From positions 62,001 to 126,000 of the forward strand of contig JALMLS010000531.1 in NCBI GenBank assembly GCA_038496445.1: DNA of 64,000 nucleotides, written 5' to 3'. A program made the position numbers and the translations under genes. Below are positions 8,293 through 29,055 of the stretch, one piece after another. The notes beneath the pieces were generated by a model. The model saw only the letters and a program-made list of their open reading frames with translations. It did not search any database and was not told the origin of the DNA. Numbering within the stretch: position 1 is the stretch's first letter; every line of letters starts with the position of its first letter. Origin of the DNA: Trichosphaerium sp. ATCC 40318 (lineage: Eukaryota; Protista; Tubulinea).

Positions 8293-9511
8293 TCTCAACT
8301 GCGTCGGCTAAGTTGTTGTAGCTGTTGGTCAAAATGATATCAGTCAGCGCTTTTAATTTCACGTGTATTTTTAGCGTGGGTCTTTGAGTAAGCTACATGC
8401 ATATATAAAGTAGTATGAGTATTCATGGCGATGTATAATACCGACGAACTATGAACAGTTATGTCGTTCGAAAAGTACATTAAAACAACAGTGCAATCTA
8501 CAAACTTGAAAGGCCATTGGACACTTGAAAGATACTTTTACCTGCTTTTATAGCATTGAATTGTTTATGAGTAATCACCAAACTCTTTTAGAGCTCATGA
8601 ACGAGGTCACGGACGCGCCCAGAACACGGTAAGACCTTTTTGAACACTTTGCTTCGCTAACTCCTCTGTACCCATCCGAGATACGTTGTGTCATTACCTA
8701 CGAACAAATAGAGCTGTAAGTTACGTAGGTACTTTCACCGGATTGATACTTTCTTTTTGCATCTCGAACTGATCATCTACAATGTCTCAGGAAATACTCG
8801 TATGGAAGTACTAACGCCATAGCGTTTTCTTGCTCTGTTAAACAACAGCAAACCAATTCCGAAATTTCAGCGATTTCATTGTCTAAAACGAATTCACAAA
8901 CGCTCTTTAGTAGCATGGAGAACATTGTAAGGTGAGTTACAAAGAGCAAGGGTAAGTTTCAAGACAATCAGGCTATCCGAATACTGCAATACTCCGGACT
9001 TTAAATGCGTTTTCGACTGCCCTGTATCAGTCTCAAAACGCTCCCAAAGTCTTTAATACCGTTTGGTAGCTATGTGATCGTTTTTTAAGCAAAATATGGA
9101 ATACCTACAATTTACTGTTGATCAAAATATACCAACAATAAAAGCATTTTCGCTTTTTTTGCTAGTGGGGAACATGGGTAAAGCATTACTTAATTCCACA
9201 ACCGCCAGCAGTACGGCATTCCTGCTAGTAGAAGGCTTGCGTTACAAAACCTACTACCGGAAAACGGACCTCAAGTACCGACATTCCGTTGCAAGTGATG
9301 ATCCCTCTTCTTTTTTTTTTAGTACCTATTTTTATCACCAACTGAGCGTGAGCGACGTTTGATACACGTTGTAGTACGTGTCCTGTTACAGCAGATTTCA
9401 AACTGTACAATGTTGCGTCAAAGGCAATACAAACAATAGATTTCTTCAAAAAGGATGACTTGAACAAAACACAATAAGTCAAGTACATCGTACTATTTTT
9501 AACTGAGACAA

Positions 9512-19270: not shown

Positions 19271-22200
19271 TCACATAGCGCTGTTTCAATTTAACGTTAA
19301 TTTACTTTTCAAATCAGTAAGCACGTGATTTTCTGCTCCTACCCATCACAAAAGTATTTCATGTCAAACGCTTGGTCTTTATTATTGTTATTACAAGGTA
19401 TTGGAGGCGGAGGCATCTGTGAAGCTTGTACTAATACCTGTATTCTTAGAAAAGAATGATTTAGCATTAAGAATTGCTCCAAATGTTGTTTTATGTAAGA
19501 ATAGAACATTTATTGTGATAACTAGTGAAGTATTAGCGTAATTCACGAACGCACAAATGACGTACATGCACCAAGGTTAATGAGTGAAGCTATGATTGCA
19601 AACATTGCAAATCTTTCTATATTTGCAACAGCAATAGCGAAGCATAGCAAAGCAAAGAAAGTGACGTTGTATACAACAAAGAAAATAACACGTGATTCGT
19701 TAAACACCTTAATTGGTATCTTTCTTATTCTAAAACCCAAAACACTGCAAGTTAAAAGCAACAGCCCCTTTTGTCCACGTGTTAAGATTTAATAGCTATT
19801 AACGTTTGTTACAGAACGTACGTTTGCACCAGCAATGATATTTCTGATAACCAAGAATCCTGTAGTTGTAGAGCACTTGTGGTAGTTGTTGCTAATTCTT
19901 ATTGAGTCAACCACAACAATTGTCTGGCTTGATTGATGAACAATTGTCTATGAACGAACATCAGAAACTGTATTTTTTGAGAATATATACGCACCAGCAC
20001 AGAAAGACATATAATATGACAACCAACAATGATGGCGACCCACATGAAAACAACGCTACCAGATATTTTATAGACAGCAGTTGACTTGTTCGAAAACAAT
20101 CTTTCCAACCGAAGTGTCTTTGCAAAAATAGGTCTTTAGAGAACAAGTAAGTACACTATAATAAAGTACTTTCAAAGTCCAAGGCGTACGCAAACAGAAG
20201 TAGAAAGCCAATATCAAGAATCCAAGGTTGAATGACACAAGAGGCGTCTGTAACAACGTTTGGCATTAACGTGAATACACTTCCAGCAAGAATACAAGCG
20301 CCCAACAGACTTATTCCCATGAATACAGGAGAAGATGCCTATTCAGAAGTTATGTATGTGTACTAGGTATGTTATTCTAGTACCTTAACAGCCCGTTGTT
20401 TGATGTTGAGAACCAAGAATATAGCCCAACCAATGTACACAGCAATAAAGAGACATGACATTGCAGTAATTGCAATTTCCGTCCAGTGACCTTCAAGTAC
20501 CAGTCAAACATTAAGTTCATTCCGTCTCAATTGCGTACCATACTGAGGATCAAAGATTCGTTCTTTCCATGTTGGCATTGGATAGATTAGGTCCTTGTTC
20601 TGAGTGTCGCTTGGGCCTAATCCACAGTCAACAAGTTGCTATTAAAAGTGCTATTAAGTCTTACCAACAATTTCGAGATCACCACGTGTTTGAATTTGTA
20701 CATGCAACCAATCTTTTTGTTGTTCTCTAGTAGAACTCCAAGAGTACAAGCCAGCAAGAGTATCCAGCTTTGTTCTTAGTATGATATCATAGAGAATGTC
20801 ATCAACCTTTAGAAAAAAACAATTTAATAACAGGACGACATTATGCACCACTTACACTTTGGACGTCACATCCAGTATTATTAGAAACTGTAACCAGTTT
20901 ATCATCAGCGTTCATCTATAGCAAGGTGTTTGTTAGTGAAAAAAAGAAGGAATGTTCAGTGTACCATTAGGTTGGTTGGATTGTTGGCAATAGCGATTTT
21001 CACAGCATTGTAGATAACAGAGTATAAACCAGCTAAATTTGCTGTGAAAATTGACGACTCCTCTTCACCTGCGTCTCTAAGGCGATTTCTGAAGTTAGTC
21101 CAGTTACCAAAAGTACCGGGAGGGTAGGTAATTTCATCATCGTGCTGTAAAAAAGGTTAACAAACTATAAGAATAAAGAATAAAATGTACTTGTGCAACA
21201 GAGCTAGTGTAATGGTACAAACTTTGATCAAAGACATCTGTAAATATTGATATTGCTTCACCAATAGCAAGATATCTGGGGGTATAATCGTCTTCCCTGA
21301 GAGTCTCGAGAACTTGACCAGCACTGTCAAGCAACAAATGACAAAAGAACCTAACAAATAATGTAAGAAAAAGCCGTATGTTTAAACTCACCATGCATCA
21401 GGATCTAAAGCAGCTGCCGCACGCGCATTAGCTGAATGATTTCGTTTCACATCATCCGGAAAATCACGGTGATCTTGAGCAGCACCGCTAGGTGTAGCCT
21501 GAGCGGGACCTGGATTAGAAACGTTAAGCACAATAATTTTAGAACAAAAGCAATAAAGTTTGGTGTAACGTACTGTCCATCATAATATATTCTCCTACCA
21601 CTTCCATACCAGCTAAACGCAAAGCTAATCTAAACTCGGCATTGAGGCATCTACAAAAGGATTGTCATTAAGTTCAGAAAATACTGTCCAAAGTCATACC
21701 GTGGACTAAGAAAATCACGCGGACTTCCGCTATAAAATAAAGCAACGGTTTTCGCTCCAGCAATACGTAAACTTTGGATAGCCGTTTTATGAGAGTTATC
21801 AGTACTAGGCCCCGCGCTTAGTGCGTAACTAGAGCTCCGTGCAAATACGTTGAAAAGGTTGCCAATCGACACTATAAAAAGTGGTTAAACTAAAGCACAA
21901 ACATTGTGAACCAACTTTCAATGGCAACATCCACCTCAACGTTTCCACTACGCAGTAAAAAAAATCATTTTGAAGTGATCTCTTTGGAGAATTTTATGTA
22001 AGTTTCTCCGTCATTTTTTGAGAAAAACACGGGGTTTTCGGCTTTTCGCCTCTCGCTCACAACGCCCTTGAAAACACATAAAATAGTTGCAATTTGCTCT
22101 ACTACGCTAGTAAACGCCTTACAGAGGTGGGAACATTTAAGTGGATGAGGACACATTGCAAGAGATAAAAATAGTAGATATTTTCCGAACGTACGCAATA

Positions 22201-25456: not shown

Positions 25457-25978
25457 GTCGAGGTGTTGATGGTTGAGGGGTGGTAAAATAATGATAAATT
25501 TGATTGACACAGATTGAAATTTAACAGCAATAAATCAATCAAGATGGTTTGAACACTCAGAAATCTGTCAAAAAGGTACTCAATCAGCCCTCATGTTATG
25601 TTAATATGGAATTTGCTACCTCAACATAGGTTTGTACTTTATTACAATATCAATCAAACAAAGTGATAACTATATTTATAACTATCGATGTGTCTCAAAA
25701 TCAGGTCACTTCTTCAGTTTTTCTGCCGACCAAAAAGTTGACGCTGAGAGTTCGGTAGCAATGCTTGAAGCACTGCAAGGTTTCAAGAATTAGCTTAGCA
25801 ATCACATTTTATGTATTTTGGAGCGATTTGAAGAAGCTGATTAATAGAAGTTCTTTTTTTTCTTGACAATTCACAGCCACCACAAGCGCGTTTAAGTTCA
25901 ATATTTCTACGCCTTCAAGAAGATTTACAGCTATTGGATACAATTCACCAGTCTTTATCGAATATTTATTTAAGTCTT

Positions 25979-28262
25979 TCATTTGTCAAGTAAGTTTGGG
26001 TACATCGATACAAGATGCTTTGCTGATGGCGTATCCTTTTTAGCTTTAAAAAACTTACGAAGTGTTTTAGGGTCTTGAGATATGAACCATGAATTGAGGA
26101 GGGTAATACTCATAGAGTTACATGTTAGTAATCCGTATTCAAGCCACTCATTCATCGTTTCAATGCTAAGATCATCAGCTGGTCGAATAAACACATCAAA
26201 GACAACAAGAGACTGCAAAGAGTCAACACAATACTTATCAGCAAACTTGAAGACGTTGAATAGAGTATCCAAATCAAGGTTAGGAGGTATGCAATCAAGG
26301 TAAGCGTATTGAACAAAAATCTTGACAATTAAGGGATCTTCTGTAACAGTGATACTTGAGTTCTTGTCACTATCATCTCCATTTGATCCAATTTCTTTTG
26401 ATAGAATAGCACCTTCAAAGAATGAAGACCTACACATCAGCATGGCCTAGAATAAATATCAGTTAATAGTCTACATATTGAGGCATTGCAGAATGGTTAA
26501 AACTCACCTTGTGACATTTAATGATGTCTTTTCCAACAATGATACTAAAATCTTTTTCTTTTGATTCAAAAAGCGTTTTGAGGGAATCACCAAGAGTCTC
26601 GGTATCATTTACACATTCTAGAGGACCTTTATCACGTATAGAGCATATGATAACGTTGTCCATGTTGATTTTCGCGTATTGTTCTTGGCTTAACTTTTTT
26701 AGGTCTGCTATCAGTCTTGACGATTTTTTCGGGAACATGAAAGGACGGATTGATGTCGCTGTGAGGCATTAGAAAAAACTGATATTTTTGTGTTTGTAAA
26801 AGTATGTTATACGCACGTGGCATTTCATTTGTTTTTGAGGCGATTTTTTCTTCGTTACTCGGTACGTGTCTCAAGAGGTGCGGAATAACTAGTGGGTTTT
26901 CTTCCGTCAAATCAACCAGCAGAACATGAATAACGCCTTTTGGTATATCCAATCCTGAGCACATGACGTTAACCATATGCATGGCACAATCATATGTAGT
27001 CATGTTTCCTAATTTCAGAGTGTGAGTTGAAGCTATTAACTTGGAGTACTACCTTGATAGTCTGGAAAGAACTGTTTGAATTTCTCTGGACGATGTTGTA
27101 TTTCTTGCTCGAAAAGATCAAGTTTTGTCATTACAAGGACAATAGGAGAACTAGCTAAGTATGCAGTTTGCGCAAGTTCTTTGAATAAGTCGCATGTTTC
27201 CTTAAAGTCACATGTCATATCATCTTCAAAGAGGTTATACAAGTATCTAGTACGAATCAAGGAATATAGTAAGAAAAAGAAGAGTTTTTTTTTAAAGAGC
27301 AAACACCTCATTGAGGGAAAGGATACCCAACGAGGGAGGTACAATAAAATGTACTATTAACATTGTCAAAGCAATGTATCCATTTTTTTCTTTCATTGCG
27401 TGCGCCTATTAACAGGTCAACAAAGATGAAGATTACAACAAAACAAACACTTACCTCCAACATCAATCAGTGAATATAGGTTACCGTTCAGTTCATAGCT
27501 TACCTCTATAATACCAGTAGTACGTATACGTATATTAACAAGCTCTTTATCGCTCACAACATAAGAATCAGCCGATTGAGAGCAAATAGATTCCATCATA
27601 CTGTAAAAAACAATACATTAAAAATACACAAAAGAAGATGGTTTACGCTTACGCTTTTGCATTACCACGGAGACACATCCTCATAGATTTAGAGTCAATA
27701 GATTCCATCATACTCATAAAAGCTTGACTGTCTTTCAACCTAGTAGCGCACGTGTCAAAAAGAAAAAAATTAAAAGAAAGAAATGTACAATGTCAAAGTG
27801 TCAATGTGCGGTTGTGTCCAAGAGTTGCCAGGAATAGCAAGAAACGAGTTGATATTGTCTTTTGTTCCCTATTTTAGTATTAGGATGTTTCTAATGACGT
27901 TTAGATAGTTTACGCTGTCTAATGTCGAATACTCGGGTAGTTGTGCTAATTCAACAAAGTACTGCTTTAGAAACGATAATCCAGGCGTTTTGTATGAATT
28001 ACGATCATCTTTAGTCATATTCGGTTGGCGAAATCGCATTAAAAGCGTTGATTTTCCTATTCTTCTATAAGACATATAAAACATATCTAAATACGCCAAC
28101 ATTACCACTCATACATGTGCCTACGATATAATTAGTGTTTGAACAAAAAGTATCAGTTAACTTACCCAAAATCTGTACTTTTGTCCGCGTGTTGCGTTCG
28201 ATCGTTTGTTGTTTTACTAAATCATCAATTGACGACCTGCGTTTCGTTGACTTGTTACCCAT
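25979..28262 (-). CDS. G-protein alpha subunit-BTB/POZ fusion protein, 11 exons, about 583 aa
   Basis: Exons 28262-28166, 28120-28106, 28056-27914, 27868-27789, 27739-27653, 27600-27455, 27405-27327, 27246-27053, 27008-26817, 26758-26508 and 26446-25979 sum to 1752 nt in one open frame. G-alpha motifs: MGNKST, GTCMSGKST, RIRTTGI, DVGGARNERKKWIHCF, TKLD. BTB motifs: DFSIIVGKDIIKCHKAMLMCRSSFF, FVQYAY, ADKYCVDSL. Confidence 0.8.
27247..27326 (-). other. U12-type (minor) GT-AG intron in the G-alpha-BTB gene
   Basis: Donor GTATCCTTT; branch site TTCCTTGAT followed by 9 nt ending in AG; splicing restores SLVGYLYNLFEDD. Confidence 0.85.
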
Positions 28263-29055
28263 ACTACTAAAAAGTCTTTTTACATTTGGGTCAGCTTAAA
28301 ATATTGCTTGTTAAGTTGTAGGTAGCTGAATCGTATGACAGGTGTCATGCAGGACTGCTTGTTTGTTTTTAATACACTGTGAATATTTCAGTTCTACCAT
28401 CATACGTAGTGTTTAAGGGTAAAGCATAAAGGTAAGTTTATCCTTTGGGTGCCATTGCGGTATAAGTTACTATCACCTTTAAAGGGGGAAGAATGCACGC
28501 TAAGTTCTGTCACAATAGTACATGGTTGCTATTGTTACAAAAGAGGGAAGATGTCGCAAGTAAACAGCCGTTTGGTAACAATAATTAGGTCAAATAGCCT
28601 TCATTGATTAGGATCTATGCCTGTTTGCGTTTAAATTACTGTTAACAGAAAGGTAATTTTCTAAAACTTGCTACTGAAAAGTACGCTGCCAATGGTCTAC
28701 AATCAGAAAATAAGAGGATGTGCATAGGACGTGCATAGTATGCCCCTTAAACTATCTTCTATTTTTTGTTCAAAAGACCAAAAAGACTCAAGTCATTCTT
28801 GTCCCATCTTACTTTCTCCTTTTTTTCGTGCTGAAAAACTTTCATTGAACTTTCGTGTTTTACTGTGAGGTGGCACCTCTTACTGCTCGTTTTTTGGCAA
28901 GCATAAAACAGATGTTTTAACATTGGAAACTGTTCAGTGACGTAGTAAACCAAGTCATGAATCCATTACCTTTTCAGAGACAGATTTTTCCTCAGCTTAA
29001 CTCCCTTGGCTTAGCGACTGTTGATAATCGAAATAATTACTATAAATTAGCAGCA

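What the first reader, a model, noticed from the sequence alone, without database searches (positions are those of the whole stretch)
27000..28166. The fused G-alpha domain carries natural GTPase-dead substitutions
Seen: P-loop GTCMSGKST versus canonical GAGESGKST; switch II DVGGARNER versus DVGGQRSER (Ala codon at 27401-27403); G4 TKLD versus NKxD; G5 region VDLT versus TCAT. The cis Arg finger (RIRTTG) is retained. Known: Gai1 G42 and Q204 correspond to Ras G12 and Q61, and substituting them impairs hydrolysis. Inference: a constitutively GTP-bound protein or pseudo-GTPase, paralleling the atypical GTPase domains of RhoBTBs.
Basis: partly seen in the sequence, partly recalled or inferred. 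Interest (0 to 1): 0.7.

Follow-up and report, generated by a model that had tools for sequence, protein, structure and literature searches.

The report
Hydrolysis-crippled G-alpha fused to BTB
An expressed 11-exon protist gene encodes a G-protein alpha subunit that keeps its nucleotide-binding residues but lacks the catalytic glutamine, and is joined to a probable BTB domain, so it looks like a permanently "on" or non-cycling switch tied to a ubiquitin-ligase adaptor; its biochemistry is untested.

Summary
The gene lies on the minus strand at 28262-25979. It has 11 GT-AG exons and encodes 583 aa. Spliced cDNA contigs from three public runs match the genome without a mismatch. They confirm every junction, including a 15-nt micro-exon that encodes the odd P-loop, and one contig runs from the G-alpha exons into the BTB exons.

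Confirmed motifs:
- P-loop G-T-C-M-S-G-K-S-T (Gai1 G42 becomes Cys, E43 becomes Met).
- Switch I R-I-R-T-T-G, with the Arg finger and the Mg-binding Thr kept.
- D-V-G-G-A (Q204 becomes Ala, codon 27403-27401).
- T-K-L-D.

TKLD is a normal G4 motif (Rac1 has it). The G5 stretch cannot be aligned to any G-alpha, so "VDLT versus TCAT" rests on spacing only. Introns are 44-80 nt and hold no spare exon, so splicing cannot restore Gln or Gly.

Best reading: a lipid-anchored, receptor-uncoupled G-alpha that binds GTP and barely hydrolyses it, acting as the recognition or regulatory part of a BTB adaptor, like RhoBTB. A nucleotide-free decoy is not excluded.

This scan had already noted paralogues of this family elsewhere in the same genome. 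New here: RNA proof of the fusion, and a G-alpha-BTB array, also degenerate, in Anaeramoeba ignava. Searches of public protein and metagenome collections found no closer relative.

The parts
25979..28283 (-). Whole transcription unit: 5' end at about 28283, ATG at 28262, stop codon at 25981-25979. 11 exons, 583 codons.
   Evidence: The X3 contig ends at 28283 and is followed by a sequence that I recognise as a template-switch (SMART-type) cDNA oligo. The oligo identification is my own knowledge.
28166..28262 (-). Exon 1: MGNKSTKRR... (N-myristoylation-type start followed by a basic patch) and a short N-terminal helix region. Ends with the first base of the Gly33 codon.
   Evidence: The myristoylation motif is read by eye from the sequence.
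28106..28120 (-). Exon 2: a 15-nt micro-exon encoding T34-C35-M36-S37 of the P-loop. Cys35 is at the Gai1 G42 / Ras G12 position.
   Evidence: X2 record 11 and X3 record 14 carry these letters between exons 1 and 3. Searches give the GT-AG sites and codons.
27914..28056 (-). Exon 3: K39-S40-T41 of the P-loop and the start of the presumed helical domain.
   Evidence: The local G-alpha HMM places its start at the P-loop Lys, with a non-significant score.
27653..27868 (-). Exons 4 (27868-27789) and 5 (27739-27653): the rest of the presumed helical domain. No detectable sequence similarity to G-alpha.
   Evidence: Exon 5 holds a copy of the start of exon 6, a 36-nt direct repeat at 83% identity.
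27455..27600 (-). Exon 6: switch I with Arg165 (Arg finger), Thr168 (Mg-binding Thr) and D187-V-G.
   Evidence: Pfam G-alpha 5e-8. Aligned to solved G-alphas. Codons checked.
27327..27405 (-). Exon 7: completes the Gly190 codon, then Ala191 (27403-27401) at the catalytic Gln position, then RNERKKWIHCF, which matches the consensus of canonical switch II.
   Evidence: Pfam G-alpha 1.1e-7. Local HMM. Codon checked.
27053..27246 (-). Exon 8: the G4 region with T256-K-L-D259.
   Evidence: Pfam G-alpha 8e-14, 51.9 bits, above the 48.8 cut-off. PDB alignments.
26817..27008 (-). Exon 9: presumed beta6 / G5 / alpha5 of G-alpha (V312-D-L-T315 at 26916-26905) and the start of the linker. Cannot be aligned to G-alpha.
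   Evidence: Searches were all blank. Assigned by position only.
26508..26758 (-). Exon 10: linker and the first strands of the BTB domain (...DFSIIVGKDIIKCHK).
   Evidence: Residues 59-83 align to residues 31-57 of a Pfam-validated BTB of Anaeramoeba ignava, E 0.009.
25979..26446 (-). Exon 11: the rest of the BTB domain (AMLMCRSSFFEG...ADKYC...) and a helical C-terminal part, then the stop codon.
   Evidence: Residues 2-60 align to residues 59-112 of the same BTB, E 0.013. All top ESM-feature hits are BTB clusters, score 0.94. Pfam and PDB sequence searches were blank.

Best explanation
The gene encodes one 583-residue protein in four parts: a myristoylation-type N-terminus, a divergent G-protein alpha domain, a linker of roughly 80 residues, and a probable BTB domain.

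Shown:
- The exon structure, and that the fused mRNA exists.
- The residues that hold the phosphates, Mg2+ and guanine are kept: GxxxxGKST, the switch I Thr, DxxG, and the Lys and Asp of TKLD.
- The Arg finger and a canonical switch II helix are kept.
- The catalytic Gln is Ala. The P-loop Gly and Glu are Cys and Met.

Inferred:
- The domain still binds guanine nucleotide but hydrolyses GTP orders of magnitude more slowly than a normal G-alpha.
- The alpha5 end is buried under a C-terminal extension of about 240 residues, and the receptor-contacting C-terminal segment has diverged beyond recognition. It is therefore not driven by a receptor.
- It sits mostly in one state, most likely GTP-bound.
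- It then serves as the partner-recognition or auto-regulatory module of a membrane-anchored BTB adaptor, presumably for Cullin-3, in the manner proposed for RhoBTB.
- The conserved switch II face points to a classical G-alpha partner (effector, RGS or G-beta-gamma) as ligand or substrate.
For: - Gene model and expression: spliced contigs with 0 mismatches in three runs from three studies. X3 record 13 bridges exons 3 to 11, and X2 record 11 bridges exons 4 to 1 through the micro-exon. All ten introns are GT-AG and the frame is open for 583 codons.
- G-alpha identity: Pfam PF00503 on exons 6, 7 and 8, and alignments to solved G-alphas.
- Residue states.
- No alternative exon, and no nearby acceptor that yields Gln.
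- Effect of the substitutions: Gai1 G42V sharply lowers hydrolysis by displacing Q204, and Q204 is the catalytic residue (10.1101/795088). Gz is reported to have a 200-fold slower GTPase (PMC9884212); that it carries a non-canonical P-loop is my own recollection.
- Contrast with XLG2, which has little nucleotide binding and has lost G42, K46, the Arg finger and DVGG. All of these except G42 are kept here.
- RhoBTB parallel and autoinhibition model: PMC4931677 and PMC3946479 Table 1.
- BTB.
- The same pairing of a degenerate G-alpha with BTB occurs in Anaeramoeba ignava, once as a continuous open frame.
Against: - No biochemical data.
- The G5 loop and the helical domain, which both cover the nucleotide, cannot be aligned. 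Nucleotide binding may therefore be weak or lost.
- The BTB call rests on two marginal pairwise alignments plus language-model features. Pfam does not match the separate exons, and the single-sequence fold of exon 11 was unusable at pLDDT 47.5.
- Cullin-3 binding was not tested.
- No orthologue close enough to measure selection was found.
- The joined protein was neither scanned nor folded.
Confidence: 0.55

Rival explanations
1. Nucleotide-free decoy. The G-alpha domain no longer binds nucleotide usefully and acts as a fixed scaffold that holds G-beta-gamma or an RGS protein regardless of nucleotide, as proposed for plant XLG2. The BTB part then hands that partner to a ligase.
For: - The G5 and helical-domain segments are unrecognisable.
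- In XLG2, replacing the G5 Ala is predicted to clash with the nucleotide. Here that position is Asp or Leu, depending on register.
- The P-loop Glu, which forms a salt-bridge network with switch I and switch III in AtGPA1, is Met.
- Switch II, which I recall as the G-beta-gamma face, is intact.
- BTB ligases that ubiquitinate G-beta-gamma exist: KCTD5/Cul3 (PMC10348674).
Against: Unlike XLG2, this protein keeps the P-loop Lys/Ser/Thr, the switch I Thr, the Arg finger, DVGG and the Lys and Asp of G4. Such retention is hard to explain without nucleotide binding.
Confidence: 0.22
2. Still a cycling GTPase. Hydrolysis is carried out by another residue, or by a partner that supplies the missing catalytic group in trans, as in HAS-GTPases or Rap with RapGAP. 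The protein would then be a regulated switch with an unusual off-mechanism.
For: - GTPases with a hydrophobic residue in place of the Gln do hydrolyse GTP (PMC2848588 and 10.1101/2020.08.16.253419).
- The Arg finger is kept, which would be pointless in a protein that never hydrolyses.
- The RhoBTB review depicts RhoBTB2, and probably RhoBTB1, as able to bind and hydrolyse GTP despite similar substitutions.
Against: - No such mechanism is known for any G-alpha.
- The P-loop Cys at the G42 position adds a second lesion. A bulkier side chain there (G42V) displaces the catalytic site.
Confidence: 0.13
3. A decaying, functionless paralogue of an expanded family whose catalytic residues have simply drifted.
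For: Earlier notes of this scan say the genome holds several paralogues and that one has a broken frame (unchecked). The helical and C-terminal segments are very divergent.
Against: - The frame is open through 11 exons, and all splice sites are canonical.
- The gene is transcribed and correctly spliced in three runs.
- Switch II and the G4 region are still close to the family consensus.
Confidence: 0.05

Closest known systems
RhoBTB1/2 (and Dictyostelium RacA): atypical Rho GTPase fused to BTB domains, Cullin-3 adaptors
   Same: A GTPase domain at the N-terminus and BTB at the C-terminus. Substitutions sit at both the Ras G12 and Q61 equivalents: RhoBTB2 has GDNAVGKT / DTFGDH, this protein has GTCMSGKST / DVGGA. 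The RhoBTB model has the GTPase domain acting as an intramolecular regulator of the BTB.
   Different: The GTPase here is a heterotrimeric-type G-alpha with a helical-domain insert, an Arg finger in cis and a lipid-anchor start, not a Rho. Only one BTB is detectable, not two. No homology of the fusion itself is implied, so this looks like convergence. That Dictyostelium RacA belongs to this group is my own recollection, not checked here.
Anaeramoeba ignava G-alpha-like + BTB tandem array (GCA_028826165.1, contig JAPDFW010000072.1; loci L001/L002; proteins P0006, P0030 and a 698-aa model)
   Same: An MGxKxSK start. A G-alpha with TKLD and without the catalytic Gln (DVGGM, DIWSR, DFGSG). It is followed by a BTB, and in one copy a single open frame runs from the last G-alpha-homologous exon into the BTB. 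The BTB aligns colinearly with exons 10 and 11 here.
   Different: Only 33-38% identity in the G4 exon, no closer than to ordinary G-alphas. The Anaeramoeba copies are more degenerate: the Arg finger is lost, and DxxG is lost in two of the three. Their linker is an NQ repeat. Two copies are annotated as separate genes. Common descent of the fusion is not shown.
Plant extra-large G proteins (XLG2), 'decoy' G-alpha
   Same: A natural G-alpha-like domain with lost catalytic residues, joined to a foreign domain. Proposed to work without a GTPase cycle (10.1101/795088).
   Different: XLG2 has lost G42, K46, the Arg finger, DVGG and the G5 Ala, and its extension is N-terminal. Here only G42, E43, Q204 and probably G5 are changed, and the extension is C-terminal.
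Mammalian Gz alpha
   Same: A natural G-alpha with a 200-fold slower intrinsic GTPase (PMC9884212). From my own memory, its P-loop also departs from GAGESGKST at the positions changed here.
   Different: Gz keeps the catalytic Gln, couples to receptors and has no fused domain.

Membership tests
Heterotrimeric G-protein alpha subunit (Pfam PF00503) | Match to the family profile | tested here: met
   Tested exon by exon. E6 5e-8, E7 1.1e-7, E8 8e-14 (51.9 bits against a cut-off of 48.8), matching consecutive profile positions 151-282. The whole joined protein was not scanned.
Heterotrimeric G-protein alpha subunit (Pfam PF00503) | P-loop GxxxxGK[ST] | tested here: met
   G33-T-C-M-S-G38-K-S-T, assembled from three exons and seen in cDNA contigs. 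The inner residues are non-canonical (Cys and Met in place of Gly and Glu).
Heterotrimeric G-protein alpha subunit (Pfam PF00503) | Helical domain inserted between G1 and switch I | tested here: inconclusive
   About 125 residues lie between the P-loop and the Arg finger, close to the length I recall for canonical G-alpha. Exons 3-5 show no detectable similarity.
Heterotrimeric G-protein alpha subunit (Pfam PF00503) | Switch I Arg finger and Mg-binding Thr (RxxTTG) | tested here: met
   R165-I-R-T168-T-G, aligned to solved G-alphas.
Heterotrimeric G-protein alpha subunit (Pfam PF00503) | Catalytic Gln after DVGG | tested here: not met
   Ala191, codon GCA at 27403-27401. The same letters are in the cDNA contig.
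Heterotrimeric G-protein alpha subunit (Pfam PF00503) | G4 NKxD | tested here: met
   T256-K-L-D259. The Lys and Asp are kept. Thr in place of Asn is within the small-GTPase consensus (N/T)(K/Q)xD, and Rac1 has TKLD.
Heterotrimeric G-protein alpha subunit (Pfam PF00503) | G5 (T/S)CA loop and a free alpha5 C-terminus for receptor coupling | tested here: not met
   No TCA-like motif, and exon 9 cannot be aligned. About 240 further residues follow the presumed alpha5.
BTB/POZ domain (Pfam PF00651) | Match to the family profile or to a validated member | tested here: inconclusive
   Pfam is blank on exons 10 and 11 taken separately; the domain is cut by intron 10. Two colinear BLASTP alignments to a Pfam-positive BTB, E 0.009 and 0.013. 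All ten best ESM-feature hits are BTB, score 0.94. PDB sequence search was blank and the fold was unusable.
BTB/POZ domain (Pfam PF00651) | Cullin-3 binding and dimerisation | not testable with these tools
   Needs pull-down, or a confident complex model of the joined protein.
RhoBTB family | Rho-type GTPase domain followed by two BTB domains | tested here: not met
   The GTPase domain is a G-alpha, and only one BTB-like region was found. An analogue, not a member.
PseudoGTPase that binds nucleotide but does not hydrolyse | Loss of catalytic residue(s) with binding motifs retained | tested here: met
   Sequence level only. Actual binding and turnover are not testable here.

The most novel reading that the evidence does not exclude
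A family of lipid-anchored, GTP-locked G-alpha domains has been recruited, in at least two distant amoeboid lineages, as the substrate-recognition head of BTB/Cullin-3 ligases. These would mark classical G-protein partners (G-beta-gamma, RGS proteins or effectors) for ubiquitination at the membrane. This would be a heterotrimeric-G-protein counterpart of RhoBTB and a receptor-independent way to tune G-protein signalling.
Probability: 0.25. Interest if true: 0.8.

Novelty: new variant of a known kind. Interest (0 to 1): 0.6.

Why it matters
G-alpha subunits are known almost only as receptor-driven timers. A naturally hydrolysis-crippled, receptor-uncoupled G-alpha wired to a ubiquitin-ligase adaptor would be a new use of the fold. 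It would give a G-alpha parallel to RhoBTB and a second natural 'non-cycling G-alpha' alongside plant XLGs.

This copy is a good object for experiment. Its full coding sequence is now backed by cDNA, it keeps all nucleotide-binding residues, and it differs from a working G-alpha at few defined positions. Binding and turnover assays would therefore be easy to interpret.

I found no paper describing the architecture.

Tried and rejected
- Public-database searches for relatives, all without a close hit:
  - HMMER search of 1.84 billion representatives with exon 8 gave 21 hits, all at or below 47% identity, none a G-alpha-BTB.
  - Word search with exon 11 gave nothing.
  - Two metagenome scans, with exons 11 and 8, gave nothing.
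  - Word searches with the Anaeramoeba proteins P0006 and P0030 listed no protein carrying both G-alpha and BTB. Length limits exclude the 698-aa model itself.
- PDB sequence searches with exons 11 and 9 were blank.
- AlphaFold on exon 11 alone gave pLDDT 47.5. I judged it unusable and did not send it to a fold search.
- ESM features for exon 9 gave no usable hit.
- MAFFT fragment placement of exons 4, 5 and 9 was arbitrary, and I disregarded it.
- A weak BTB-like tblastn hit at 9276-9404 showed no convincing ORF, and I dropped it.
- My by-eye likeness between the G5 regions of this protein and P0030 was not borne out by BLASTP, so I make no claim from it.
- I rejected a pseudogene reading (intact frame, expressed) and alternative splicing that restores the residues (introns too short, no spare exon copies).
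Full report
**What is there**

The stretch lies in a eukaryotic genome with 38% G+C. The finding sits on the minus strand. Three-frame translation and a Pfam scan of the open pieces showed G-alpha segments separated by short introns.

I laid the contigs of four public runs on 25500-28500.
- Run X3 holds spliced contigs with no mismatch to the genome.
- X3 record 13 (1077 nt) runs from the end of exon 3 through exons 4-10 into the first 35 nt of exon 11.
- X3 records 12 and 14 cover the rest of exon 11, and exon 1 plus the micro-exon.
- X2 record 11 joins exon 4, exon 3, the micro-exon and exon 1.
- X1 covers exons 9-11.
- The X3 contig ends at 28283. The letters that follow are ones I recognise as a template-switch cDNA oligo (my own knowledge). 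That makes X3 a cDNA library and puts the mRNA 5' end 21 nt before the ATG.

After shifting the ambiguous cuts to GT-AG, the model has 11 exons:
- E1 28262-28166
- E2 28120-28106
- E3 28056-27914
- E4 27868-27789
- E5 27739-27653
- E6 27600-27455
- E7 27405-27327
- E8 27246-27053
- E9 27008-26817
- E10 26758-26508
- E11 26446-25979

This gives 583 codons plus a stop. Introns are 44-80 nt.

**The observation**

The P-loop is assembled from three exons. It reads G33 (split codon), T-C-M-S (a 15-nt micro-exon seen in two runs), G38 (split codon), then K-S-T. Against canonical GAGESGKST, Cys35 stands at the Gai1 G42 / Ras G12 position and Met36 at E43.

Exon 6 aligns to the switch I of solved G-alphas. 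Arg165 falls on the Arg finger and Thr168 on the Mg-binding Thr.

Exon 7 gives D-V-G-G-A191-RNERKKWIHCF (Pfam 1.1e-7).

Exon 8 passes the Pfam G-alpha cut-off on its own (8e-14). It aligns VMTKLD to LNKxD.

- PDB phmmer
- Pfam
- an HMM I built from nine G-alphas
- ESM features
- BLASTP against an Anaeramoeba G-alpha

The G5 comparison therefore rests only on spacing after FPDYQG. The helical-domain exons 3-5 are equally unrecognisable, although the length between the P-loop and switch I looks normal to me.

**Can splicing restore the residues?**

- Only one spliced form is present in the contigs, with no differing letters.
- tblastn of every exon peptide against the 64-kb window finds no second copy.
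- The introns are too short to hide an exon.
- Around the exon 7 acceptor there is no alternative AG that keeps the frame, and no in-frame Gln codon.

**What the substitutions mean**

Kept:
- P-loop Gly/Lys/Ser/Thr
- switch I Thr
- Arg finger
- Asp and Gly of DxxG
- Lys and Asp of G4
- a switch II helix that matches the family consensus almost letter for letter

Lost:
- the catalytic Gln
- the P-loop Gly and Glu
- probably the G5 Ala

The XLG2 preprint (10.1101/795088) summarises three relevant points:
- Q204 is the catalytic residue.
- G42V sharply lowers hydrolysis by displacing Q204.
- The P-loop Glu takes part in a salt-bridge network with switch I and switch III.

That work also shows what a G-alpha with little nucleotide binding looks like. 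XLG2 lacks G42, K46, the Arg finger, DVGG and the G5 Ala. The present protein keeps all of these except G42 and perhaps G5.

Gz is reported to hydrolyse 200-fold more slowly (PMC9884212). From memory, it has a non-canonical P-loop.

TKLD is not a lesion. Table 1 of PMC3946479 lists TKLD for Rac1 and gives (N/T)(K/Q)xD as the consensus. The same table shows RhoBTB2 with GDNAVGKT and DTFGDH, that is, substitutions at both the G12 and Q61 equivalents.

My best reading is a domain that binds GTP and hardly hydrolyses it.

It is unlikely to be receptor-driven, for two reasons:
- The presumed alpha5 is followed by about 240 residues.
- The C-terminal segment that contacts receptors in canonical G-alphas has diverged beyond recognition.

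A nucleotide-free decoy remains possible because G5 and the helical domain are unreadable. A still-cycling enzyme with an alternative mechanism is also possible, as HAS-GTPases show (PMC2848588).

**The fused part**

Exons 10 and 11 read by eye like a BTB domain split by intron 10.
- Pfam and PDB sequence searches on the separate exons were blank.
- A single-sequence fold of exon 11 was unusable.
- All best hits by ESM features are BTB clusters, score 0.94.

The best support came by a side route, through a relative found in the large search.

**Relatives**

The HMMER search of 1.84 billion representatives with exon 8 gave only 21 hits, none above 47% identity. So neither this protein nor a close relative is in that library.

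Two hits lack the Gln and also have TKxD:
- P0014, a metatranscriptome fragment, has DVGGA and FTKID.
- P0006, from Anaeramoeba ignava, has DVGGM and FTKLD, with Tyr at the Arg finger.

I fetched the P0006 locus. It holds three tandem G-alpha-like genes, each followed on the same strand by a BTB open frame that Pfam accepts (9.7e-14).
- In the first copy (L002 2676-5823, a 698-residue NCBI model with no Pfam on record), one open frame runs from the last exon homologous to the C-terminal part of P0030, through an Asn/Gln repeat, into the BTB.
- The other two copies are annotated as separate genes, and their frames overlap in the repeat.
- Their G-alpha parts are more degenerate than the one here. 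P0030 has GIRGSGKST, RYYQKTVG and DIWSR.

Exon 10 residues 59-83 align to that BTB at 31-57 (E 0.009). Exon 11 residues 2-60 align to it at 59-112 (E 0.013). The two alignments are colinear across the intron, which supports the BTB call.

Other searches found nothing more:
- Word searches with P0006 and P0030 listed no protein carrying both domains.
- Metagenome scans found nothing.
- I found no paper on such a fusion.

**Earlier notes of this scan**

Earlier notes report several G-alpha-BTB paralogues elsewhere in this genome, also with altered catalytic residues, and call the organism amoeba-like. I could not read those sequences, so I treat the notes as leads. A paralogous transcript with the same intron position appears in run X1 (record 2).

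**Left out**

I list that step as referred.

**Verdict**

Hydrolysis is very probably crippled, but the nucleotide state is unknown.
- Two of the four cited deviations carry no weight.
- The architecture is a new variant of known kinds: a G-alpha, a pseudo-GTPase and a GTPase-BTB adaptor.

Noticed in passing
L002:2676-15757 (Anaeramoeba ignava, GCA_028826165.1, JAPDFW010000072.1): Tandem array of three degenerate G-alpha-like genes, each followed by a BTB open frame. In copy 0 one open frame joins the last G-alpha-homologous exon and the BTB through an NQ repeat (698-aa model, no Pfam on record). Copies 1 and 2 are annotated as split genes whose frames overlap in the repeat. A fourth BTB-like stretch lies at 21514-21699.
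   Followed up: partly
window:27574-27609 and 27686-27721: A 36-nt direct repeat at 83% identity. The acceptor and start of exon 6 (MMESI...) is copied inside exon 5, and both copies are in the mRNA. It looks like a partial exon duplication that also leaves a cryptic AG inside exon 5.
   Followed up: partly
window:23762-25510 (-): An intronless 582-aa ORF directly downstream, with strong LRR_6 repeats (2.4e-17) and a weak F-box-like start (E 0.16). If the F-box is real, this is a second ubiquitin-ligase adaptor type next to the BTB gene. The repeats of about 25 residues (GVHTIDLS...ITD..LKALKGVHEIHL) are very regular.
   Followed up: no
P0014 (JGI metatranscriptome fragment, 246 aa): Another natural G-alpha with DVGGA and FTKID, the same two changes as here, from an unidentified organism. 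Loss of Gln and the Asn-to-Thr change occur together in three sources: this gene, Anaeramoeba and P0014.
   Followed up: no
P0008 and P0016 (P0016's cluster includes a protein from Tritrichomonas musculus): G-alphas with long low-complexity C-terminal tails ending in a shared YEY.SEY...SYSEYY motif. P0008 has also lost RxxTTG and DVGGQ.
   Followed up: no
window:26388-26539 (run X1, record 2): A transcript contig 90-95% alike over the exon 10/11 junction, with nine extra letters at the joint. Probably a paralogue with the same intron position.
   Followed up: no
window:27358-27401 (run X2, records 7-9): Abundant contigs match only the RNERKKWIHCF part of exon 7 and then continue into unlike sequence. 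One of these continuations reads ...LDVGG followed by CA, which would begin a Gln or His codon. A canonical G-alpha is therefore probably expressed in that sample.
   Followed up: no
window:28957-29208 (+): A divergently oriented ORF about 670 nt upstream of the mRNA start. By eye it resembles the start of a phytanoyl-CoA-dioxygenase-like protein. Not scanned.
   Followed up: no
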